DNA from: Antechinus flavipes
Taxonomy: Eukaryota
Length of the DNA: 64,000 nt
Assembly: GCF_016432865.1 (NCBI RefSeq)
Contig: NC_067401.1
Coordinates: forward strand, 868,001 to 932,000
Reading direction: 5' to 3'
In this document: piece by piece, positions 680 to 54,791 of the stretch
How positions within the stretch are numbered: position 1 is the stretch's first letter
How the letters are laid out: every line of letters starts with the position of its first letter
Position numbers and translations under genes: made by a program
Notes under the pieces: model-generated
What the model was told of the DNA's origin: nothing
The model's input: the letters and a program-made list of their open reading frames with translations, nothing else
Database searches by the model: none

Positions 680-3600
680 CTGTAAAGGGACCCAAACAGG
701 GGGGCCTTGACCCAAGCTGCAGTCAGAGCACGAGCGCCCGCGGGCAGAAACCGGCTGCTGTTTGCACAGCTGTGGCTGAGCATCCCAGTCACTCCCCGGT
801 GAGGCAGCTGCTGGGACTGGCACTGGCCCAGGCCCAGGGGCCCAGGGTCCCAGCGGGATCATCGCATAAAAAGGGAGTTGACTCGTGGGAGGAACCAGAG
901 CCAGAAAGGATGACATCCACAGAGCCCAGAGCCCCTCAGGACCCTCCCCTGGCCAATTCTACATGGGCCCATCTTGGCCAGAGTGGCTCGGCCCCATCCA
1001 CCTCCTGGGATCACCGGGGGTCACCACACCCAGGATGACCCCCGGAGAAGGGGGACAAAGGACAGGCAGACTGGAAAAATCTGAAAGCAGCTCAGACTGG
1101 GCTTCCTCTGAAATCCACTTGGGGCCCCAGAATGCCTCCCACTGCACTTATGCTGCCCCCAGCAGCCCCGGTCCTGAAAAGGCTGTGTGGGGGTGGCAGT
1201 GGGGAGAAGGGAGAAGGGGACCTGGAAGTCCTGGATTTAAAATCACCCTCTTCCTTAGGCCCCTCTTCTGTAAAATGGAACCCTGTAAGAAAATCGGTTA
1301 TGACATCACCCATTCCTGTAGCTTGAGCCTGAAGAGCATCGGCAACTCTGGGGGATCCCTCCCCACTTACAGCCATTTTGAAAATTTCAAAATAAACGAT
1401 AGCATCATATGTTTTTGTGACAATCGATGCTATTTTCTAGGACAAAAACGAACGAGAAGAGCAGCACGTGTTTCTTCTCCAGTTTTGCCCCTTCCACGTC
1501 TAGTACGGGGGATGCTTGTGTGGCGGGGTCTGCGTTCGATCCCTGCCCTATCACTTTCTGATTGAAGCGGAGAAGAAAAGGTGGGCGAGGGAGCAGCATT
1601 TGCACTGTCAGGTCACCCTCACAGCAGAGTGCAGACCTGGGGCCCAAGGGCCAGAGGCCCCGGCAGGGCCTGTCAAGGGCTGCACCAGGACCAGGCCCTC
1701 TCTCCCATCTCCATGGGGCAGGGGAAGCCCCAAGGCATCACAGTCACAGTTGTCAGAGGAAGGACCGCTATTGAAGGGAGTGCCCACGAGCTCACCAAAG
1801 AATCCACAGGAACCCTGGGACAATGATCGATGGCTCTGAACAAAGAGTCTTCGGGGGAGGGGAGCATTAGGAAAGAAGGCCTGTTTTTGACATGAGGAGA
1901 CCCAGAGCTAAGACGATGACTGTCACTGGAGAAGCCGGTCCTTCAGGCCATGCAGAAGCGGGGCAGGGCAGTTGCTAGCATGCCTTTATGAGGGGAGGGA
2001 GCACGGGGCCGCCCCGCCACTCGCATCGGCGGGGTCCGCTGCCGGCCCAGATCTCTCAGAAGCAGGTTTGGGAGGGCTCCGAGAAAAGAGGTGCAGAATT
2101 TGGGACACTAAAAGCCCCAAAGTCAGCCCGGAGAGACTGGAGAAACTGCTCAGAGCTGAGCACGCNNNNNNNNNNNNNNNNNNNNNNNNNNNNNNNNNNN
2201 NNNNNNNNNNNNNNNNNNNNNNNNNNNNNNNNNNNNNNNNNNNNNNNNNNNNNNNNNNNNNNNNNNNNNNNNNNNNNNNNNNNNNNNNNNNNNNNNNNCT
2301 CTCACAGATATTCTCTGTGCCTCCACAAGGAGGAGCCAGGGGACTCTCCCACGTTCTGACATCCGGCCCCCTGAGGACGGGCTCCGTACCATGAGGAGTT
2401 ACGGTCAATGACAGTATTCTTCTAGAAAGCCTCACTGTAACGGAGGCAGTTCTACACAAAAACAGGCGCCCTAAGGCCCCACTGGCGGAGTTGGGAGCCG
2501 GGCCCATCGTCCAGCCCGGTGGCGCCGCTGGCACGACCCATATCCCAGAGAGCAAAGGAAGCGGCGTCCGGCTGCGGCAGAACATGGTTTTGCCGTAAAA
2601 AATGCCGAGCAGGACAAAGCCGGGAACATGGCCCGCAAGAGGGCAGCAAGGGGAGACGGCCTGGCGCAAATTTACCCTAGCCCGACTCTAACCCCCAGGG
2701 CCTCCAGATGAAAAGGCTGGCCAGCCCCAGGGGAGTGGGCAGGGACCAAAGTGTCTTCTTCCTCTTCCTTTGTTTCCCAGTTTTCGCTACTTGGCCAACA
2801 AGGCAGTGTGTCTGGCAGAATTGAGATTCAATTGTCTTTTCAATGGGTAAGGGGCTAGAGAGAGAGCCTGGGACTGGCTCTGAACACTAAAATTACATCA
2901 CGAGGTGTTTTGGGGGGAGGCGGCTGCTGCCCCCCATTTCTGGTTAGCGAGACTCAGTATCGCCTCAGTTTCCACAGAACAGCAGGAATCCAAGCCCTGT
3001 TTCGAGGCTCCTATCTGGCGCGGGGAGCCCCAAAGGTGCCAGTCCCACCCTGCCCCCAGCCTCCTGCCTGGTCACTTACTGTTTGGGTGGAACATCTCAC
3101 AGGTGAACCTCATCTTCGGGGGGCTGAGTGGGTAGTCCAGGGGAAAGCTCAGGATCGCAGGGAAAACGCCAAACTCAAAACAGGTATCTTCTGGGCCCCT
3201 GCAGAAGAGATTCAAATGAGCCCTGTGGGCCCGACGCCTGGGGCCCCTCCCCCTGCACTCACTGGGACACATCCCCGAGGCAGGGAGCACCCTGTGGAGA
3301 AGCAGCTCCTGGAGAACAGGTGGGGAAAGTGGGCGGCGCAGAGCTCCTCCTCCCTTCGGCCCTATGTGGCCGGCTGTCCGGCCCGGGGTCTGGGCCAGTG
3401 CCCCATGTCCACTGCCATGCCCCTCCCCCCCAAACCAGACCAGGCGTGGGCAAGCTCCCTCCTACCAGGGTGTGCCCCACTCAGCCACTAGGACCACCCA
3501 CTGAGGAGCTCCTCACAGCCTCCCGGGTACGAGACAAACATCAAGGGCTGGCTGGGGTCCGGCCCCAGAAACTTCCTTCTCCCCTCCTCCTGTGCCTGAG

Positions 3601-29850: not shown

Positions 29851-30764
29851 CTCTCTCTCCCTCCCCTCCCCTTCTTTTCCGCTCCCCCTCCTCTCTCCCT
29901 TCCTTCTCTCCTTCTTTCTCCCTCCTCTCTCCTCTGTCACTCTTCTTCTCTCTTCTTCTCTCTCTTTCCCTCTCCTCCATCTTTTCCCCTTCCTGTCTGG
30001 TTTTTTTCTTTGGCTCTCCCTTCTTCCTCCCCGCTCTGTTTCTCCTCTCTTTTCTTTCTTTCTTTCTCTTCCTCTATCGGTCCCTCCTCCCTCCCTCTCT
30101 GCCTCTCTCTCTTCCTTTCTCTTTTTTGTCTCTGTCTCTCTTCCTCCCTCGTTTTTGTCTCTGTCCCTCTTTCTCTTCCTCCCTCCTTTTGGTCTCTCTC
30201 TTCCTCCCTCCCTTTTTGTCTGTCTCTGCATGTCTGAATCTCTTCCTCCCTCCTTTTTGTCTGTCTCTTTTCCTCCCTCTTTGTTTCTGTTTCCCTTCCT
30301 CCATCCTTTTTGTCTCTCTCTCTTTCTCTCTCCTTTTTGTTTCTGTCTCCCTTCCTCCTTCCTTTTTGTCTCTGTCATTCTTTCCCTTTTCCCTTTTTGT
30401 CTCTGTCCCTCTTTCTCTTCCTCCCTCCCTTTTTGTCTCTCTCTGTGTCTCTCTCTTCCTCCCTCCTTTTTGTCTCTCTCTTCCTCCTTCCTTTTTGTGT
30501 ATCACTCTCTTCCTCCCTCCCTTTTTGTCTCTGTCTCTGCATGTCTGAATCTCTTCCTCCCTCCTTTTTGTCTCAGTCCCTCTTCCTCCCTCCTTTTTGT
30601 TTTTGTCTCCCTTCCTCCTTCCTTTTTGTCTCTCTCTCTCTTCCTTCCTCCCTTTTTGTCTCTCTCTTCCTTCTTTTTGTCTGTCTCTCTTTCTCCCTCC
30701 TTTTTGTCTCTGTCCCTCTTCCTCCCTCCTTTTTGTTTCTGTCTCCCTTCCTTCTTCCTTTTTG

Positions 30765-30822
<58 letters not shown>

Positions 30823-32530
30823 TTCCTCCCTTTTTGTCTCTCTCTTCCTCCCTTCTTTTTGTCTGTCTCTCTTCCTCCCTCCTTTTTGTCTCTGTCCCTC
30901 TTCCTCCCTCCTTTTTGTTTCGGTCTCCCTTCCTCCTTCCTTTTTGTCTCTCTCTCTTCCTTCCTCCCTTTTTGTCTCTGTCTCTCTCCCTCCTTTTTGT
31001 CTCTTTCTTCCTCCCTCCTTTTTGTCTGTCACTTTCTCTTCCTCACTTTCTTTTTGTCTCTCTGTATGTCTGAATCTCTTCCTCCCTCCTTTTTGTCTAT
31101 CTCTCTTCCTCCCTCCTTTTTGTCTGTGTCCCTCTTCCTCCTTTTTGTTTCTGTCTCCCTTCCTCCTTCCTTTTTGTCTCTCTTTCTCTTCCTTCCTCCC
31201 TTTTTGTCTCTGTCTCTCTCTTCCTCCCTCCTTTGTGTCTTTCTCTTCCTCCCTCCTTTTTGTCTGTCACTCTTTCTCTTCCTCCCTCCTTTTTGTTTCT
31301 GTCTCCCTCCTTCCTTCCTTTTTGTCTCTCTCTTCCTTCCTCCCTTTTTGTCTCTGTGTCTCTCTCTTTCTCCCTCATTTTTATCTCTCTTCCTCCCTCC
31401 TTTTTGTCTGTCACTCTTTCTCTTCCTCACTCTCTGTTTGTCTCTGTCTCTGTATGTCTGAATCTCTTCCTCCCTCCTTTTTGTCTGTCTCTCTTCCTCC
31501 CTCCCTTTTTGTCTCTCTCTTCTTCCTTTTTGTCCGTCTTGCTTCCCACCTCCTTTTTTGTCTCTGTCACTCTTTCTCTTCCTTCCTCCCTTTTTGTCTC
31601 TCTGTGTCTCTCTCTTCCTCCCTCCTTTTTGTCTCTCTCTTCCTCCTTCCTTTTTGTCTGTCACTCTTTCTCTTCCTCCCTCCCTTTTTGTCTCTGTCTC
31701 TGCATGTCTGAATCTCTTCCTTCCTCCTTTTTGTCTGTCTCTCTTCCTGCCTTTTTGTCTCTGTCCCTCTTCCTCCCTCCTTTTTGTTTCTGTCTCCCTC
31801 CTTCCTTTTTGTCTCTCTCTTCCTTCCTCCCTTTTTGTCTGTCTCTCTCTTCCTCCCTCCTTTTTGTGTGTCTCTCTTCCTCCCTCCTTTTTGTCTCAGT
31901 CCCTCTTCCTCCCTCCTTTTTGTTTCTGTCTCCCTTCCTCCTTCCTTTTTGTCTCTCTCTCTCTTCCTTCCTCCCTTTTTGTCTCTCTCTGTGTCTCTCT
32001 CTTCCTCCCTTCTTTTTGTCTGTCTCTTCCTGCCTCCTTTTTGTCTCTGTCCCTCTTCCTCCCTCCTTTTTGTTTCTGTCTCCCTTCCTCCTTCCTTTTT
32101 GTCTCTCTCTCTCTTCCTTCCTCCCTTTTTGTCCGTCTTTTTTCCCCTCCTTTTTGTGTCTCTCTTCCTCCCTCCTTTTTGTCTGTCCCTCTTCCTCCTT
32201 TTTGTTTCTGTCACTCTCCTCTTCCCTTTTTCTCTGCCTCTTTTCCTCCCTCCTTTTTTTTTTGTCTCTGTATGTCTGAATCTCTTCCTCCCTCTTTTTT
32301 GTCTGTCTCTCTTCCTCCTTTTTGTCTGTCACTCTTTCCTTTTTCCCCTTTTGTCTCTGTCCTTCTTCCTTTTTGTCTCTTTCACTCTCTCTTCTTCCCT
32401 CCCCTTTTCTCTGCCTCTCTTTCTCCCTCCTTTTTGTCTGTTTTTCTCTTCCTCCCTCCTTTTTGTCTGTCTCTTTCTCTCCTCCCCCTCCCTGTTCCTG
32501 CACGGTTTCTGTTTTTCCCTTTTTCTTTCG
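29850..32530. repeat. Complex CT/GT minisatellite array (~2.7 kb)
   Basis: Units such as CTTCCTCCCTCCTTTTTGTCTCTGTC; landmark ATGTCTGAATC recurs near 30231, 30541, 31066, 31454, 31705, 32272. Confidence 0.95.
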
Positions 32531-32717: not shown

Positions 32718-32897
32718 GTGACAGACAAAAAGAAGGGAGAGAGACACAGAGACAAAAAGGGAGGAAGGAAGAGAGAGACAAAAAGGAAGGAGGAAGGGAG
32801 ACAGAAACAAAAAGGAGGGAGGAAGAGGGACAGACAAAAAGAAGGGAGGAAGAGAGAGACAAAAAGGAAGGAGGAAAAGGGACAGAGACAAAAAGGA
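32718..32897. repeat. Inverted copy of the adjacent CT/GT minisatellite
   Basis: Reverse complement nearly identical to ~31910-32020 and other array units. Confidence 0.85.
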
Positions 32898-34146
32898 GAC
32901 CACTGGGAGAACAGTGGTCCAGGGTTTTCAGGCCGGGCGCTGGAAGCAATGAGACTTTACTGCCAGCGTTCTTAGACCTTTCCCAACAAGGAAAAGACGA
33001 AACTTCCTCTGCCTGGAGTGTTCTGATGGCCCTGGGCAAGGAAGGAGTTCAGCATCCGTGTTAGGAGAAAAAAGGAGCTGTCTCCTAGGTCCAACTGAGG
33101 CCCTGGGCCACAACCATTCTCTCCTAATCCTCTCCCTTAAATTCAAAGGTCCTCTAGACTCCAGGAGGAGGAGTGAAGGCTTGATCTAAGGGGAGATCGT
33201 GTCCCAGGGAGGTCTCAAGAGACGAAGGAACGAGGAAACCTTTCTTGTGCTCTGAGTTTAAAGTCCTGTGCTAAGCAGGGATTCACATTTTACGGGTACG
33301 GACGCCCCCAGAGCTGAGCTTCTGGAGGCCCTTCACACACGTCCACAGTAACACCACAGTGTTCAGGGAACGGGACCGTGGCTGGTGTCCGGGACTTGAG
33401 GGAGGAGGACTTTCTTCTCCTGCCTTCTGCAGCTGCTGGGGGCTGGGATGGAAACAGGGTTGGGGTCCTGTTTGGGTCTGAGGGAGACAGTACGAGAGGC
33501 TGGCCCACATAGGGGAGAGCTGGGGAAAGGGTGACTCTCCCCAGGAGGGGGGGGGGCCTGCAGAGGAATTCCACTTTTTGTAAAATCCCTGTCAGTGAGC
33601 AGCCAGGAAAAGGGAGGGGGGAGCAACATCCCGAGTTGTGGCTGGCACGGGGACCCTCAAAAGGTTTGCCGAGCCCTGGCCCATCTCACCTCCCGCGTCC
33701 TCTGACAACTCTGGGTGGGGGGCCCCCGTTCTGTACCTGAGCAGATGGAGCCCAGGGAGGGGCGGGCAAGTCTCATCACAAAATATCCATTCCGCGAGGC
33801 AGAGGCAAGATGGGGGGGGGGGGGAGGCCGGGGTTCCCCTGAGCTTCTCCAAAGCCCCCTCCACACCTTAAATAACATCTCAGAATGAATTCTGGACTGG
33901 CAGACCCAAGCAGAAGGCAGGATGAAACGCTATTCCAGCGCAGACCAGCAGAGGGGGCAGGCGGGAGAGGTCCATCTCACTGGGCCCAGAATGGAGGGCA
34001 GTTCGGGGTGGGCACAGCCAGCAGCCCGAGCGCTCAGCCCCCGGACAGTAAGACCAGCTGGGCAACTTCTGAAGCCACGGGGCCCGGGACCAGCCACGGG
34101 GCCTAGGACACACGACCCAGCACGGGTTCGGTTACAATCAACCTTT

Positions 34147-35487: not shown

Positions 35488-35531
35488 CTAGTTCTCGAAT
35501 CTGGCGTAAGGGTTCTGTTCTTTAAACAGGC
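35488..35531 (-). CDS. PTTG1IP: PTTG1IP last coding exon (GLFKEQNPYARFEN*)
   Basis: TTTCCAG|GC acceptor; YxxPhi endocytosis motif; TAG. Confidence 0.95.
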
Positions 35532-38500
35532 CTGGAAACGAGATGTTCAGAGCACAGCCCGGTGACCCAAGGGGCAGAGAAACAGCTTCCCAGCTCTCAG
35601 GGAGGGGGGGGGCCCAGACCCCCTCCGGCTCCAACCTGACTGGGGGACCCACCGCCCACGACAGGAAGCCCCCCCCCCTTCACAGGGCCTGAGCCCTTCC
35701 TGTTCCTCCCTATGGCCCCCAGAGACAGGGCTCCGGCCCTGGGGCCCAGCACCCCCTCCTAGGGAAGGGTGGGAGCAGTGGGAAAAGTCAGGACGTCGTG
35801 GGCCACCGGGTCGGAGGAGGTGCCCAGACAAGGCCGGGTCCTCGCCCTTGGTACCCCCAGGCCCAGACCAGCGGCTTCTCCCAAAGCTTCACACACGATG
35901 ACAGGGAAGAGGGTCTCCTGCCAGCTTCCCCCAGCTTGCGAAGGCCGCATCCTGCTCGCGGACGGGGGAGTGCGGGCAGGGCCGCGTGTGTCGGGCCCAG
36001 CGGGCCTCTGGGACACCTCCCGGACAAAGCGCCCTCCCCGCGGGGCACCGCCCATGTGGCTGAGGCCGCACGCAGACCAACAAAAGGCTCTCACCATATT
36101 TTTTCCTGATTTCTTCGTGTCTGGACTTCATCTCCGCTCTCCTGCAAGAAGGAAATCCGGTCACACACCGAGAGGACCCGACTGTCCCTTTCCGTTTGCA
36201 CGCCCCGGGAGCGGACGCTGGCACGCTGACCCCAAGGCTGGCTGCCCGGCGCCTCCTCTCACCCGGAGCCTCGAGACTCCTGAACTCCCAGGGGGAGACG
36301 CAGCGACCACAGCAGCCTCCTGGCCGCGAGCACGCGCCCTCACCATGGGCAGACCCCTGACGGCCTGCGCTCCCGCCCTCCCTGGCCGGCTCTTCCCCGA
36401 CGTCCCCCTCCTGCGTCCCACGTCCAGCTAGAGATTCCCCGGCAGCCGCCCAGGCCCCGAGGCAGCAGGCAGGCGTCTGCCCCTCCCCTCCTAGGCCTCT
36501 GTGGTCTCCATTCTCCCCAGCCCGGCCTCCGGGCACTGCCAGGCTGGACGCTGGCTCCACACGCCCGCGTCCTGGACTCCCTCCGAGGCTCATTCCTCAG
36601 CATCCCCGGCCAGTCTCACCGCCCCCCCCCCTTCCTTTTGCTGATCCCACACCCCAGACCCTCCTTGGCTCGGGCCGGCTGCCCTTCTAGCCTTGGGCTC
36701 CAGCATGGGCCGGCCCTCAGAACCAGCAAAGAGAACGGCGTGATTCAGATGCAGCACAAATGCAGCACAGAGGCTGAGGCTGGAGGCCCGAGTCAGCCCC
36801 CGGAAGCCCGAGTCAGCTCCCGGAGGCCCGAGTCAGCCCCCGGAGGCCCGAGCCACCCCCAAAGACCCAAGTCAGCCCCCAGAGGCCAGAGTCAGCCCCC
36901 GGAGGCCCGAGCCACCCCCAAAGACCCAAGTCAGCTCCCGGAGGCCCGAGTCAGCTCCCTGAGGCCCGAGTCAGCCCCCGGAGGCCCGAGTCAGCCCCCG
37001 GAGGCCCGAGCCACCCCCAAAGACCCAAGTCAGCCCCCAGAGGCCAGAGTCAGCCCCCGGAGGCCCGAGCCACCCCCAGAAGCCCGGCCTGAGCCGAGCC
37101 TGGAGATCCAAGTCGGGCCCTGGAGGCCCGAGCGGGCGGGGCGCCCTCACCTCTCCTCCTGCCGAACTCTTCTCTCTTCTCTCTCCCTGGCAGCGCGCTC
37201 CTCCTCTTTGTCGGACCTGCCAAGACCAAGAGTCACCGGTCAGTGGCCGCAGCTGCGGGCCCGGGCCCTGCCCCAGGCGCCCCCCGAGGCTCACCTGGGG
37301 TGTTTCTTTTTCCGGCAGCAGCAGCAGCAGCAGATGGTGATACCCAGGAGGAGGGCACCTCCCACCACCGACATGGCGATGATCAGGGCTTCGAAGTTCA
37401 CTGGGACACGAGGACGAGCAAAGTGAAGGTGGCCCCAGGCAGCAGGACCCCCCCCCCCGGGGTGCATACTGCAGCCTCCCGGCCGTGAGCGCCCCCTCTG
37501 CATGGGGGTCTAACCCCATCTGGCCTTTCCTACGGGAACGCTCCCCCCTCCTCACGGCAGGACCTCCCCCGCTCACCATTCCCTCTTGTTTCAGAGGACA
37601 AGGTCCCTGAGCACAAGGCCCGGCCCCTCACAGTCGGTCCCCGTGCGGAGCACTCCTAGTGCCCAGGAGCCAGGAGGACCCCCCCACACACACCACGAGG
37701 GCCCAAGGCCAGCCTTCGATGGGGACTGCGGCCCCGCGGGCAGCAGGAGGGAGGGAGCACTTACCCCAGCACACGCCCCATCGGGCAGAGCTCAGCTGGC
37801 AGAGCGAGCTGGGCGGCAGGATCTTCCGGACCGGATAGTCCAGGCAGGCGTTATTCGTATAGCACCAGAAGCACTGAAACGGGAGGGAATCAGAGCTGAG
37901 CGGCCCTCGGCCTCCCCTCACGGGGACGTGCCTGGGAACGGGGGACGGGGAGCACACGAGCAGGGGAGGAGGAGGAGGGAGCCAGGGGCACCGTCCTGTG
38001 GCTGGCGGGCCTGGCCCTGACTGGCCCCCTACTGAGGGGCGCTCCCCTCCCTCAGGAAAGCAGGAGCCTCTTCTCCCGGCAGATTCATGAGCCCAAAAGG
38101 CCTGAGGGCAGCGCTCAGCCAGGTGGCAACAACGGGAAGACTACCTCAGCCCTCCTAAGTCTCAGAGGCTCTGGTCTGGCCCCGGGGAGGTCTGGGGTAT
38201 CCCAGGAAAATCAGCACACTTGGCACAGACGCTCCAGGATGGGCCTAAACGTCGGGCCTCGGTCCAGCAAAACTGGCCTGCAGGACCAGCCCGGAGCACA
38301 ATTCTGCCCCGAGGGCCTGGAAGTGCCCGGGAGCACCACCCTCCTCCCAGAAAGAGCAGCCCCAGGGGTCCCCCCCATCCGGAACCAGACAGGCCCCTGT
38401 CACTCAAACGGGCTCCTTCTGTGTCTGCGTTCAGTCTCACCACCTGGAGTGAATGTCCTCAGGCCACAGGCTGGCCTTGGCACCGGGCCCTGCCCTGGAC

Positions 38501-41500
38501 CCTGCCAGGGGAGGTTCCTGCCAGAGCCAGAGCTTCCAAAGCTCCCCGGGTGCACAAAACCCTCTCTCCTAAGAGAAAACCCCAGCCTGGCTGACCCACC
38601 CGCCCACCCACCCACCAGCAAGCACTTTTCAAAGGCCTGCAGGCCATCGGGCTCCGGGAGGAGCCCCACAGGAGGAGCTGACCAGGAGCGGCCTGGGACG
38701 TGGGGGAGGGCCTGAGCACTTACCGAGACGTTCTTCAGGCACTCGCTGCAGGATTTGTTGGTGTTCTCAGAGCAAGCTGGGGGGAAACAGCCTCCATCAG
38801 ATGCAGAGGAAGAAGGGGCCCACATTTTAATGCCCCCAACTCCCCACAAGGACCTGCTGGCACCAGAAAAGCCTCAACCGGTTGCTCATAGAATCCTGAC
38901 GTTCAGGGCCCTCTGCTTTACAAAGGGGGAAACTGAGGCTCAGAAAGGGGCTGCCTCCAGCCTGGACTCTGCAACAAGCCTTGCATGAGTTTTCTCTTTC
39001 CCAACGGACACAATCTGCCATATTCCCCCTTCCCCTCACATCCCCATGGAGAAAAAAGAGAAATGAGACTCTAACAAAGGTACAAAACCAACATCCCGAC
39101 CTGCTGCAAAGCCTTGAGCCAGGACGAGCCAGGATATCCCCAGACATCCCCAGGATGAACCAGGACAAGGCGGGCCATCCCCAGGACGAGCCAGGACAAG
39201 GTCGGCCATCCCCAGGATGAGCCAGGACGAGCCAGGACATCCCCAGGATGAGCCAGGATATCCCCAGACATCCCCAGGATGAGCCAGGACAAGGCGGGCC
39301 ATCCCCAGGACGAGCCAGGACAAGGTCGGCCATCCCCAAGGTGAGCCAGGACGAGCCAGGCCATCCTCAGGACGAGCCAGGACGAGCCAGCACGAGCCAA
39401 AACATCCCCAGGATGAGCCAGGATATCCCCAGACATCCCCAGGACGAGCCAGGACAAGCCAGGACGAGCCAGCACGAGCCAAAACATCCCCAGGATGAGC
39501 CAGGATATCCCCAGACATCCCCAGGACGAGCCAGGACAAGGTCAGCCATCCCCAAGGTGAGCCAGGACGAGCCAGGACATCCCCAGGATGAGCCAGGACA
39601 AGGCAGGCCATCCCCAGGACGGGCCAGGACAAGGTTGGCATCCCCAGGACGAGCCAGAACATCCCCAGGATGAGCCAGGACAAGGCGGGCCATCCCCAGG
39701 ACGGGCCAGGACAAGGTTGGAATCCCCAGGACGAGCCAGGACGAGCCAGGACATCCCCAGGATGAGCCAGGATATCCCCAGACATCCCCAGGACGAGCCA
39801 GGACAAGGTCAGCCATCCCCAAGGTGAGCCAGGACAAGCCAGGACATCCCCAGGATGAGCCAGGATATCCCCAGATATCCCCAGGACGAGCCAGGACAAG
39901 GCGGGCCATTCCCCAGGACGAGCCAGGACATCCCCAGGATGAGCCAGGATATCCCCAGGACAAGCCAGGACAAGGTTGGCATCCCCAGGACGAGCCAGAA
40001 CATCCCCAGGATGAGCCAGGACAAGGCGGGCCATCCCCAGGACGGGCCAGGACAAGGTTGGAATCCCCAGGACGAGCCAGGACGAGCCAGGACATCCCCA
40101 GGATGAGCCAGGATATCCCCAGACATCCCCAGGACGAGCCAGGACAAGGTCAGCCATCCCCAAGGTGAGCCAGGACGAGCCAGGACGAGCCAGGACATCC
40201 CCAGGATGAGCCAGGATATCCCCAGATATCCCCAGGACGAGCCAGGACAAGGCGGGCCATTCCCCAGGACGAGCCAGGACATCCCCAGGATGAGCCAGGA
40301 TATCCCCAGGACAAGCCAGGACAAGGTTGGCATCCCCAGGACGAGCCAGGACATCCCCAGGATGAGCCAGGATATCCCCAGACATCCCCAGGACGAGCCA
40401 GGACAAGGTCAGCCATCCCCAAGGTGAGCCAGGACGAGCCAGGACATCCCCAGGATGAGCCAGGACAAGGCGGGCCATTCCCCAGGACGAGCCAGGACAT
40501 CCCCAGGATGAGCCAGGATATCCCCAGGACAAGCCAGGACAAGGTTGGCATCCCCAGGACGAGCCAGGACATCCCCAGGATGAGCCAGGATATCCCCAGA
40601 CATCCCCAGGACGAGCCAGGACAAGGTCAGCCATCCCCAAGGTGAGCCAGGACGAGCCAGGACATCCCCAGGATGAGCCAGGACAAGGCGGGCCATTCCC
40701 CAGGATGGGCCAGGACGAGGTTGGTATCCCCAGGACGAGCCAGGATATCCCCAGGATGAGCCAGGACAAGGCGGGCCATTCCCCAGGATGGGCCAGGACA
40801 AGGTTGGTATCCCCAGGACGAGCCAGGACGAGCCAGGACATCCCCAGGACGAGCCAGGATATCCCCAGATATCCCCAGGACGAGCCAGGACAAGGCGGGC
40901 CATTCCCCAGGACGAGCCAGGACGAGCCAGGATGAGCCAGGACAAGGCAGGCCATCCCCAGGACGGGCCAGGACAAGGTTGGCATCCCCAGGACGAGCCA
41001 GGACATCCCCAGGATGAGCCAGGACAAGGCAGGCCATCCCCAGGACGGGCCAGGACAAGGTTGGTATCCCCAGGACAAGCCAGGACTCTGCCTGAGAACT
41101 CTGGGCGGCCCCTGCCCTGCCCAAGCTAGGCCTTCCAAGGCTCTGGGCCTAAGGTCACCAGGCTTCCCCAGGAAGCCAGAATGAGGAAGCGGTGTCCCTC
41201 CCTGCCCCTAGACGATGTGGGCCAGATCAGCCCAGGGCCCGGCTCACAGGCCACATTCCCCTCTGTTTACTGGGTTAGGAGCCCTAGTAGGTGAGGTCCT
41301 GGAGGGCAGCAACGGGCCCTTCCCAGGGCTCGATAAAGGCTCGGGCTGAACATGAGGCGAGTAACTCAGAGCCCCTTTATCAGGACCCAAGACCTCCCCC
41401 AAAGAAAGAAGCACGTGGGGGGGTGAGGGGAAACAGGACCAGAAGCGCCTGTGGGAGGGGGGACCAGGACAAGAACTGCACAAGGAGGGGGGAAGGGAGA

Positions 41501-41967
41501 CAGGACGAGGACTCCAGAAGGACCTTGCAGGTGGGGGGGTTACAACCCCCCCCAAACAATGGCAAACTGGGAGACTCGAGACAAGTCCCGGAAAGCCTCC
41601 GCTCTGGCACCTCCAAAGTCGAAGCGTGATTGGAGGGAGGAGGGGGTGACGCAAAAACCAGGGGAAACCAGGAAGGGGCGCGGTGGGGATGGGTCCTTCC
41701 CGTCGGGACCAGCGCGCCCCGCCCCACTATGCGCAAGCGCAGGTTGCCCCCAGGAGAGCCCGACTCCCCCGCTCTCCTCCCCGCGCAAGCGCAGTGGGCT
41801 CGCCCTCAGCCCAGCTCCCTCCTCGCCCTCCATCCTCCCCCCACTCCGCTCTTACCAGCGGCCGCGCTCTGGGCGGACACGGCCGGCCCGGACGGAGGCA
41901 GGAGTAGCGGCAACAGCAGCAGCAGCGGCCCGAGCAGCGCGGCCCGAGCCGGGCCCCGGGGCTCCAT
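35488..41967 (-). CDS. PTTG1IP: Pituitary tumor-transforming gene 1-interacting protein (PBF), 178 aa, spliced gene span
   Basis: Exons 41967-41856, 38776-38724, 37873-37765, 37400-37295, 37216-37151, 36141-36095, 35531-35488 join in phase: signal peptide, PSI domain (CSENTNKSCSECLKNVSCFWC...), transmembrane helix, CCCCCC cluster, basic/acidic tail, C-terminal YARF motif. Confidence 0.96.
36095..36141 (-). CDS. PTTG1IP: PTTG1IP coding exon 6 (47 nt)
   Basis: TTGCAG|GAGAG acceptor, TATG|GTGAGA donor; RAEMKSRHEEIRKKY. Confidence 0.95.
36782..37090. repeat. 20-bp minisatellite in PTTG1IP intron 5
   Basis: GGAGGCCCGAGTCAGCCCCC tandem units with a variant block (AGCCACCCCCAAAGACCCAA) recurring three times. 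Confidence 0.9.
37151..37216 (-). CDS. PTTG1IP: PTTG1IP coding exon 5 (66 nt)
   Basis: TTGGCAG|GTCC acceptor, GAG|GTGAGG donor; SDKEEERAAREREEKRVRQEE. Confidence 0.93.
37295..37400 (-). CDS. PTTG1IP: PTTG1IP coding exon 4 (106 nt; transmembrane helix and Cys cluster)
   Basis: TCCCAG|TGAAC acceptor, CAG|GTGAGC donor; NFEALIIAMSVVGGALLLGITICCCCCCRKKKHP. Confidence 0.95.
37765..37873 (-). CDS. PTTG1IP: PTTG1IP coding exon 3 (109 nt)
   Basis: TTTCAG|TGC acceptor, GG|GTAAGT donor; CFWCYTNNACLDYPVRKILPPSSLCQLSSARWGVCW. Confidence 0.96.
38724..38776 (-). CDS. PTTG1IP: PTTG1IP coding exon 2 (53 nt)
   Basis: CCCCAG|CTTGC acceptor, TCG|GTAAGT donor; CSENTNKSCSECLKNVS with two N-glycosylation sequons. 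Confidence 0.96.
39115..41085. repeat. ~2-kb VNTR built on 10-11-bp CCAGGA units in PTTG1IP intron 1
   Basis: GAGCCAGGAC / ATCCCCAGGAT units; higher-order landmark CCAAGGTGAGCCAGGAC recurs six times. Confidence 0.97.
41856..41967 (-). CDS. PTTG1IP: PTTG1IP coding exon 1 (signal peptide)
   Basis: MEPRGPARAALLGPLLLLLPLLLPPSGPAVSAQSAAA; donor CTG|GTAAGA; phase 1 fits exon 2. Confidence 0.9.

Positions 41968-44831: not shown

Positions 44832-54791
<9,960 letters not shown>

What the first reader, a model, noticed from the sequence alone, without database searches (positions are those of the whole stretch)
37217..37294. Extra 78-nt intron splits PTTG1IP exon 4: candidate rare mammalian intron gain or eutherian loss
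Seen: the region from the transmembrane helix to the cytoplasmic tail is encoded by exons of 106 and 66 nt, separated by a 78-nt intron with donor GTGAGC, branch-like CACTGAC and acceptor TTGGCAG. Retention gives an immediate stop (AGG TGA), so it must be spliced. Known from memory: human PTTG1IP has six exons, which requires one 172-nt exon here, and 106+66=172 exactly. Both junctions read CAG|GT, the direct repeat expected from proto-splice-site duplication, although that is also the ordinary splice consensus. Intron gains in mammals are very rare. Retention would give a protein ending right after the Cys cluster, without the basic tail or YARF motif.
Basis: partly seen in the sequence, partly recalled or inferred. 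Interest (0 to 1): 0.8.

Follow-up and report, generated by a model that had tools for sequence, protein, structure and literature searches.

The report
Old PTTG1IP intron, lost in placentals
The 78-base interval is a real but ordinary short intron of a marsupial PTTG1IP gene; it is at least as old as jawed vertebrates and was cleanly deleted in the ancestor of placental mammals, so it is a placental intron loss and not a rare marsupial intron gain.

Summary
On the minus strand, a 106-nt exon (37400-37295) and a 66-nt exon (37216-37151) of PTTG1IP are separated by a 78-nt GT-AG, phase-2 intron (37294-37217). Retaining it gives an immediate stop (AGG TGA).

The headline reading, a mammalian intron gain, is refuted. 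I mapped annotated proteins onto genomic loci. An intron lies at exactly the same alignment column and phase in:
- Tasmanian devil (84 nt)
- echidna (116 nt)
- pigeon (104 nt)
- spadefoot frog (1057 nt)
- sawfish (1645 nt)

Pig, manatee and tree shrew have one fused exon of 172-175 nt with no indel at the site, and mouse Pbf is published as having six exons. All five other coding introns are shared by all nine genes.

A minor curiosity: frog, pigeon and echidna use a conserved GC donor (GCAAGT), whereas the marsupials use GT.

No RNA run was available. DNA contigs from two individuals and a sister species cover the intron unchanged.

Verdict: an ordinary feature. The placental loss is a clean, apparently unreported example of a well-known kind of event.

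The scan noted a comparable marsupial-intron/placental-absence case in cathepsin W of this genome.

The parts
37217..37294 (-). Intron 4 of PTTG1IP: 78 nt, U2-type GT-AG, phase 2, 76% G+C. It is by far the shortest intron of the gene; the others are 364-3079 nt.
   Evidence: Same column and phase as the introns of devil, echidna, pigeon, frog and sawfish. Covered unchanged by DNA contigs of X1, X2 and X6.
37295..37400 (-). Coding exon 4 (106 nt): transmembrane helix, six-Cys cluster and start of the basic stretch (VNFEAL...CCCCCCRKKKHPR).
37151..37216 (-). Coding exon 5 (66 nt): charged cytoplasmic segment SDKEEERAAREREERRVRQEER. It is 66 nt in all six intron-bearing species.
37239..37245 (-). 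Likely branch site CACTGAC; the branch A at 37240 is 23 nt upstream of the 3' splice site.
   Evidence: Sequence. Devil has GCTGAC at the same place. Inferred, not shown experimentally.
37291..37293 (-). In-frame TGA that would end the protein one codon into the intron if it were retained.
41856..41967 (-). Coding part of exon 1 (ATG at 41967, signal peptide).
38724..38776 (-). Coding exon 2 (53 nt, CSENTNKSCSECLKNVS).
37765..37873 (-). Coding exon 3 (109 nt, PSI-like Cys-rich segment CFWCYTNNACLDYP...ARWGVCW).
36095..36141 (-). Coding exon 6 (47 nt, RAEMKSRHEEIRKKYG).
35488..35531 (-). Coding part of exon 7 (LFKEQNPYARFEN plus stop).

Best explanation
The interval 37294-37217 (minus strand) is the fourth coding intron of the orthologous PTTG1IP (PBF) gene of a dasyurid marsupial. 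It is a constitutive U2-type GT-AG intron of near-minimal length. It has to be spliced out to join the transmembrane/Cys-cluster exon to the 66-nt exon and the two last exons, which encode the conserved cytoplasmic tail. The intron is ancestral: it was already present in the common ancestor of jawed vertebrates. It was over 1 kb in sawfish and frog, shrank to about 100 nt in amniotes and is about 80 nt in dasyurids. It was excised exactly, without gain or loss of a single coding base, on the stem lineage of placental mammals, which gave the six-exon gene of pig, manatee, tree shrew and mouse. The most likely route is recombination with a reverse-transcribed spliced mRNA; microhomology-mediated repair is the alternative, and this step is inferred. 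What is shown: the anatomy, the shared position and phase, and the presence/absence pattern. What is inferred: splicing in vivo, a single stem loss, and the mechanism of loss.
For: Anatomy and stop on retention. Complete seven-exon GT-AG model giving a 178-aa protein 97.8% identical to devil PTTG1IP. Orthology: the best protein hits are marsupial PTTG1IP, and the gene order UBE2G2-SUMO3-PTTG1IP-ITGB2 lies on one strand. Intron at alignment column 178, phase 2, in the window, devil (84 nt, GT-AG), echidna (116 nt, GC-AG), pigeon (104 nt, GC-AG), frog (1057 nt, GC-AG) and sawfish (1645 nt, GT-AG). No intron and no alignment gap there in pig, manatee (exon of 172 nt = 106+66) and tree shrew. Mouse Pbf has six exons: bioRxiv 10.64898/2026.09.14.751110. 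The other five introns are shared by all nine genes. The intron is present and unchanged in independent DNA contigs of two individuals and a related species. Precise loss, preferentially in housekeeping (broadly expressed) genes and on the 3' side, is the known pattern in mammals (PMC3652778). Here the lost intron is 71% along the CDS and is the shortest of the gene.
Against: There is no RNA evidence for this species: no RNA run holds the stretch, and the runs laid were DNA contigs without joints. Gene structures in the other species rest on automatic annotations, although each was re-derived here from the genomic DNA. Xenarthra and human were not examined. The sawfish gene is labelled 'PTTG1IP-like', so it could be a paralogue. 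The mechanism of loss cannot be told from the sequences: only one intron was lost, and the junctions also carry short microhomology (2 nt, GC, in echidna and pigeon).
Confidence: 0.93

Rival explanations
1. Lineage-specific intron gain in marsupials: a new intron was inserted into a formerly single 172-nt exon, for example by duplication of an AG|GT proto-splice site.
For: Both junctions read CAG|GT. Placentals have one exon of 172-175 nt.
Against: Echidna, pigeon, frog and sawfish have an intron at the same column and phase, with the same 106/109 + 66 nt exons. A gain would therefore have to have happened at least five times at one nucleotide. CAG|GT is ordinary splice consensus and is not shared by the outgroup introns.
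Confidence: 0.01
2. The intron is ancestral but was lost several times independently within placentals rather than once on their stem.
For: Short introns of broadly expressed genes are lost recurrently in some groups (background in PMC3652778). Only three placental genomes plus one published mouse structure were examined, and no xenarthran.
Against: Afrotheria (manatee), Laurasiatheria (pig) and Euarchontoglires (tree shrew, mouse) all lack it, with identical fused junctions and no indel. One event is the most parsimonious account.
Confidence: 0.04
3. The interval is not constitutively removed. It would be a regulated retained intron, or the gene copy is decaying, so the main product ends after the Cys cluster.
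For: The intron is near minimal length, has the weakest pyrimidine tract of the gene (tggtcttggcag), and is a multiple of 3 (78 nt). No RNA data exclude retention.
Against: The 66-nt exon and the two last exons are intact, in frame only after splicing, and nearly identical in protein to devil and opossum. This implies selection on the spliced product. Retention gives a stop at the second codon, far upstream of the last junction. The donor GTGAGC and the branch site CTGAC are good.
Confidence: 0.02

Closest known systems
Annotated intron 4 of Tasmanian devil PTTG1IP (NCBI model, protein P0003, locus L005:3782-3865)
   Same: Same gene, codon, phase and GT-AG ends, and the same branch region and acceptor. 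About 92% identity over the intron. Immediate stop on retention.
   Different: 84 nt against 78 nt (a 6-nt GGGCTC-type indel), six substitutions (donor GTAAGC against GTGAGC), and one extra Cys codon in the upstream exon (109 against 106 nt).
Precise intron losses in mammals, explained by the reverse-transcriptase (mRNA-mediated) model (Zhu and Niu 2013, PMC3652778; Coulombe-Huntington and Majewski 2007, from my own knowledge, paper not held)
   Same: Exact excision with no change to flanking codons, the shortest intron of the gene, a position in the 3' half of the CDS, and a single isolated loss, as is usual in mammals.
   Different: This loss is older (placental stem) than the rodent, primate and carnivore losses catalogued in those studies. 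I found no paper that names PTTG1IP together with intron loss. The mechanism is not demonstrable here.
GC-AG introns (rare U2-type class with a GC donor and otherwise perfect consensus)
   Same: The orthologous intron of echidna, pigeon and frog has the donor GCAAGT, conserved across about 350 million years.
   Different: The window and devil have a standard GT donor (GTGAGC, GTAAGC), and so does sawfish (GTAAGT). The window's intron is therefore not a member of the class.
Cathepsin W short intron of the same genome (scan note s1-193722, unchecked)
   Same: A short marsupial intron that placentals no longer have.
   Different: There the intron is reported to have become coding sequence in placentals. 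Here the placental exon is exactly the sum of the two exons, so the intron was deleted, not exonised.

Membership tests
U2-type GT-AG spliceosomal intron | GT at the 5' end and AG at the 3' end, with consensus-like flanks | tested here: met
   CAG|GTGAGC ... TTGGCAG|G
U2-type GT-AG spliceosomal intron | Branch-site consensus (yUnAy) 18-40 nt upstream of the acceptor | tested here: met
   CTGAC with its A at 37240, 23 nt upstream of the 3' splice site. The motif is kept in devil.
U2-type GT-AG spliceosomal intron | Removal restores a conserved open reading frame | tested here: met
   The spliced model gives a 178-aa protein 97.8% identical to devil PTTG1IP. The unspliced form stops at once.
U2-type GT-AG spliceosomal intron | Spliced junction seen in RNA | not testable with these tools
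   No RNA run holds the stretch. The runs laid were DNA contigs with no joints.
U12-type (minor) intron | Donor /RTATCCTT and branch TCCTTAAC | tested here: not met
   The donor is GTGAGCCT and there is no TCCTTAAC.
Lineage-specific intron gain | Intron absent at the homologous site in outgroups | tested here: not met
   Present at the same column and phase in echidna, pigeon, frog and sawfish.
Lineage-specific intron gain | Direct repeat or inserted-element signature at both junctions beyond splice consensus | tested here: inconclusive
   CAG|GT occurs at both ends, but this is the splice consensus and the intron is older than the repeat.
Precise intron loss (placental stem) | Intron present in successive outgroups at identical position and phase | tested here: met
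   Column 178, phase 2, in six non-placental genes.
Precise intron loss (placental stem) | Flanking exons fused without indel in the ingroup | tested here: met
   Manatee exon of 172 nt = 106+66. Pig and tree shrew have 175 nt, which is 109+66 (one extra Cys codon). There is no gap at the site.
Precise intron loss (placental stem) | Absence shared by all major placental clades | tested here: inconclusive
   Afrotheria, Laurasiatheria and Euarchontoglires lack it. Xenarthra and human were not examined.
Precise intron loss (placental stem) | Signature of the reverse-transcriptase route (adjacent introns lost together, 3' bias, retrocopies of the gene) | tested here: inconclusive
   A single intron was lost, at 71% of the CDS. 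Possible bilby retrocopies (P0046, P0060) were not examined.
PTTG1IP (PBF) orthologue | Full-length similarity to named PTTG1IP proteins, with the signal peptide, Cys-rich ectodomain, TM helix, Cys cluster, charged tail and C-terminal NPYARFEN | tested here: met
PTTG1IP (PBF) orthologue | Conserved neighbourhood | tested here: met
   UBE2G2, SUMO3 and ITGB2 peptide motifs flank the gene on the same strand. That this is the order on human 21q22.3 comes from my own knowledge.
PTTG1IP (PBF) orthologue | Match to Pfam PF27838 (PTTG1IP_C) | tested here: inconclusive
   It is precomputed for the homologues, but the local Pfam copy lacks the model and returned nothing relevant.

The most novel reading that the evidence does not exclude
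The tiny intron may be more than a leftover. In tetrapods it kept a weak GC donor (GCAAGT) for hundreds of millions of years, and retention always brings an early stop. It could therefore act as a retention/decay valve that sets the PBF dose. Marsupials hardened it to GT and placentals removed it altogether, so placentals would have lost a layer of post-transcriptional control of a proto-oncogene. Nothing here tests this. Outside the splice signals, the intron sequence is not conserved between echidna, pigeon and marsupials.
Probability: 0.06. Interest if true: 0.45.

Novelty: new member of a known kind. Interest (0 to 1): 0.2.

Why it matters
It removes a false lead: there is no mammalian intron gain here. 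What remains is a clean, datable textbook case. A near-minimal intron, conserved in position from sawfish to marsupials, was excised to the base on the placental stem, while the donor had switched GT, GC, GT along the way. This may serve as one more data point for studies of intron loss and of GC-AG intron turnover. It is also a practical note for PBF/PTTG1IP work: 'exon 4' of mouse and human corresponds to two exons in all other vertebrates examined. It opens no long-standing question.

Tried and rejected
- **RNA confirmation.** The one run search returned no RNA holder. The four runs laid were DNA contigs, so junction use and retention could not be measured.
- **Loci not served.** Sugar-glider isoform X2 is not on record. 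The marsupial sample is therefore only dasyurid.
- **Word-search query.** I could not extend the open frame upstream of the 106-nt exon to get a long enough query; it is only 72 codons long. I used the 170-codon open frame around exon 3 with the region option instead.
- **G-run enrichment.** I asked whether the intron is enriched in G-runs, the intron-definition enhancers of short GC-rich introns. It has four runs, no more than its composition predicts (shuffle P = 0.35), so I make no claim.
- **Conserved element inside the intron.** Only the splice signals align between marsupials, echidna and pigeon.
- **Exonisation.** I rejected conversion of the intron into placental coding sequence, because the placental exon is exactly the sum of the two exons.
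- **Literature.** No paper couples PTTG1IP with intron loss. No statement of the human exon count was found. The 2007 mammalian intron-loss paper is not held.
- **Pfam.** The local Pfam copy lacks PF27838.
- **Big protein search.** I did not use the representative-protein search, because the word search sufficed.

Full report
**1. What is in the sequence**

Read on the minus strand, the stretch has this layout:

- An acceptor gtcccag|TGAAC at 37401/37400.
- A 106-nt exon ending CACCCCAG at 37295.
- A donor gtgagc starting at 37294.
- The motif cactgac at 37245-37239.
- An acceptor ttggcag ending at 37217.
- A 66-nt exon, 37216-37151, followed by gtgagg.

In frame, the two exons read VNFEALIIAMSVVGGALLLGITICCCCCCRKKKHPR and SDKEEERAAREREERRVRQEER. 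The Arg codon is split AG|G, which is phase 2. If the 78 nt are read through, the next codon is TGA.

**2. The gene**

A word search used the open frame around the Cys-rich exon (37873-37765). It returned only PTTG1IP proteins, with marsupials on top: devil 97%, koala 95%, opossum 92%.

Joining seven GT-AG exons gives a 537-nt CDS and a 178-aa protein that is 97.8% identical to devil PTTG1IP. The exons are:

| Exon | Window coordinates (minus strand) |
|---|---|
| 1 (coding part) | 41967-41856 |
| 2 | 38776-38724 |
| 3 | 37873-37765 |
| 4 | 37400-37295 |
| 5 | 37216-37151 |
| 6 | 36141-36095 |
| 7 (coding part) | 35531-35488 |

Peptide motifs of UBE2G2 (about 600), SUMO3 (18.8-20.0 kb) and ITGB2 (47.7-53.2 kb) lie on the same strand. 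As far as I know, this is the gene order of human 21q22.3, so this is the orthologous locus.

Non-coding identity to devil is about 76-83%. The window is therefore a dasyurid-like marsupial other than the devil. An unchecked scan note calls this genome yellow-footed antechinus.

**3. Is the intron real DNA?**

Contigs of three public runs lie across 37130-37666 without a joint and without a single difference inside 37217-37294. The runs represent two individuals of one organism and one related organism. Differences and insertions do occur in the neighbouring intron 3.

These runs are DNA. No RNA run holds the stretch, so splicing in vivo could not be observed. It is inferred from two facts. 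There is an immediate stop on retention. The downstream exons are strongly conserved and are in frame only after removal of the 78 nt.

**4. Gain or loss?**

I fetched genomic loci for annotated PTTG1IP proteins and re-derived every junction. The method was exact matching of the protein to the three-frame translation, followed by a search for GT/GC...AG cuts that reproduce the protein.

| Species (locus) | Upstream exon | Intron | Ends | Downstream exon |
|---|---|---|---|---|
| Window | 106 nt | 78 nt | GT-AG | 66 nt |
| Devil (L005) | 109 nt | 84 nt | GT-AG | 66 nt |
| Echidna (L003) | 106 nt | 116 nt | GC-AG | 66 nt |
| Pigeon (L004) | 106 nt | 104 nt | GC-AG | 66 nt |
| Spadefoot frog (L006) | 106 nt | 1057 nt | GC-AG | 66 nt |
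| Sawfish (L010) | 109 nt | 1645 nt | GT-AG | 66 nt |
| Pig (L001, checked against cDNA contig L002) | single exon, 175 nt | none | | |
| Tree shrew (L008) | single exon, 175 nt | none | | |
| Manatee (L007) | single exon, 172 nt | none | | |

I projected all junctions onto one protein alignment. The six non-placental genes have the intron at the same column and phase (column 178, phase 2). The three placental genes have no intron and no gap there. The five other introns are shared by all nine genes.

The 106 against 109 nt difference is one Cys codon in the TGC run and has nothing to do with the intron. A 2026 preprint describes mouse Pbf as having six exons (10.64898/2026.09.14.751110).

On the accepted vertebrate tree, one loss on the placental stem explains everything. 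That places the loss after the split from marsupials and before Afrotheria and Boreoeutheria diverged. A gain scenario needs at least five insertions at one nucleotide.

**5. How it works and how it was lost**

In the window, the interval is a U2-type intron close to the minimal size for vertebrates:

- The donor and the branch site are good.
- The pyrimidine tract is the weakest of the gene.
- It has four G-runs, but no more than its 76% G+C predicts.

Splicing joins the transmembrane/Cys-cluster exon to the charged tail and, further on, to the C-terminal NPYARFEN. Retention would give a protein ending after the Cys cluster or, more probably, a decay substrate. That last point is inferred.

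The placental loss is exact: manatee 172 = 106+66, with an identical number of residues between the Cys cluster and QEER as in echidna. The lost intron was the shortest of the gene in every amniote examined, and it sits 71% along the CDS.

This fits the pattern described for mammalian intron losses and the reverse-transcriptase model (PMC3652778). A microhomology-mediated deletion cannot be excluded, since GC occurs at both junctions in echidna and pigeon. Conversion of the intron into coding sequence is excluded by the exon lengths.

**6. A side observation**

Frog, pigeon and echidna share a GC donor in the perfect context GCAAGT. Sawfish has GTAAGT, and the two marsupials have GTGAGC and GTAAGC. 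The simplest history has four steps:

1. GT in early jawed vertebrates.
2. GC fixed before the tetrapod radiation and kept for hundreds of millions of years.
3. A return to GT in the marsupial line.
4. Deletion in the placental line.

Outside the splice signals, the intron does not align between marsupials, echidna and pigeon. There is thus no sign of a conserved regulatory element.

**7. Comparison with what is known, and verdict**

The intron itself is already annotated in devil gene models, so the feature in the window is ordinary. The placental loss belongs to a well-known class of events.

I found no paper that links PTTG1IP and intron loss. It therefore counts as a new member of a known kind, not as a surprise.

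The claim that gave the finding its high first-stage score, a rare mammalian intron gain, is wrong.

Open points:
- RNA evidence in this species.
- Xenarthra and human.
- Non-dasyurid marsupials.
- The mechanism of loss.

Noticed in passing
L003:26486-26601, L004:8454-8557, L006:16806-17862: The orthologous intron of echidna, pigeon and spadefoot frog has a GC donor in the identical context GCAAGT. Sawfish and the marsupials have GT. This is a long-conserved GC-AG intron that reverted to GT in marsupials and was deleted in placentals.
   Followed up: partly
window 37315-37332 (minus strand) and homologues: The Cys cluster is a TGC run whose length varies by one codon between species: six Cys in the window, echidna, frog and manatee; seven in devil, pigeon, pig, tree shrew and sawfish. 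Where the added codon lengthens the run (devil, sawfish, pig, tree shrew) this explains the 106 vs 109 nt and 172 vs 175 nt exon lengths; pigeon reaches seven by substitution in a 106-nt exon.
   Followed up: partly
window 39119-41086: A large minisatellite (period about 31 nt, about 63 copies, CCAGGATGAGCCAGGACAAGCC...) fills much of PTTG1IP intron 1. Devil has a shorter related array.
   Followed up: no
window 36782-37086: A 20-nt tandem array (about 15 copies, GGAGGCCCGAGTCAGCCCCC) sits in intron 5, just downstream of the 66-nt exon.
   Followed up: no
window 30106-32483 and 32723-32898: A 2.4-kb pyrimidine-rich (CT) tandem array of about 29-nt units lies between SUMO3 and PTTG1IP, with extreme strand skew. 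It is followed by a short inverted-orientation purine-rich copy.
   Followed up: no
proteins P0046 and P0060 (bilby 'PTTG1IP-like', other chromosomes): Both carry one extra Ser exactly at this exon junction (NQSRPDK / NQSRKDK, against NQRPDK in the main bilby protein P0014), plus scattered substitutions. They may be retrocopies of an mRNA spliced at an alternative acceptor 3 nt upstream. Their DNA was not examined.
   Followed up: no
proteins P0001 (koala X1) and P0024 (sugar glider X1): These annotated isoforms either read from exon 3 into intron 3 (koala) or carry a 50-residue insert between exons 3 and 4 (sugar glider). They are probably intron-retention or extra-exon models.
   Followed up: no
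window 36138-36141 (minus strand): A second AG lies 3 nt inside exon 6. It would give an in-frame variant lacking one Arg (QEERAEMK instead of QEERRAEMK), so this may be a tandem acceptor.
   Followed up: no
window 37447, 37647, 37678, 37949 (intron 3 and upstream): The related organism C (run X6) and a second individual (X2) differ from the window by small insertions (3-21 nt) and by transitions in intron 3 and intron 2, but by nothing in the 78-nt intron or its exons.
   Followed up: partly
window 2166-2298 and 47170-47631: Two runs of N (133 and 462 bases). The second lies inside the ITGB2 region. They were left as they are.
   Followed up: no
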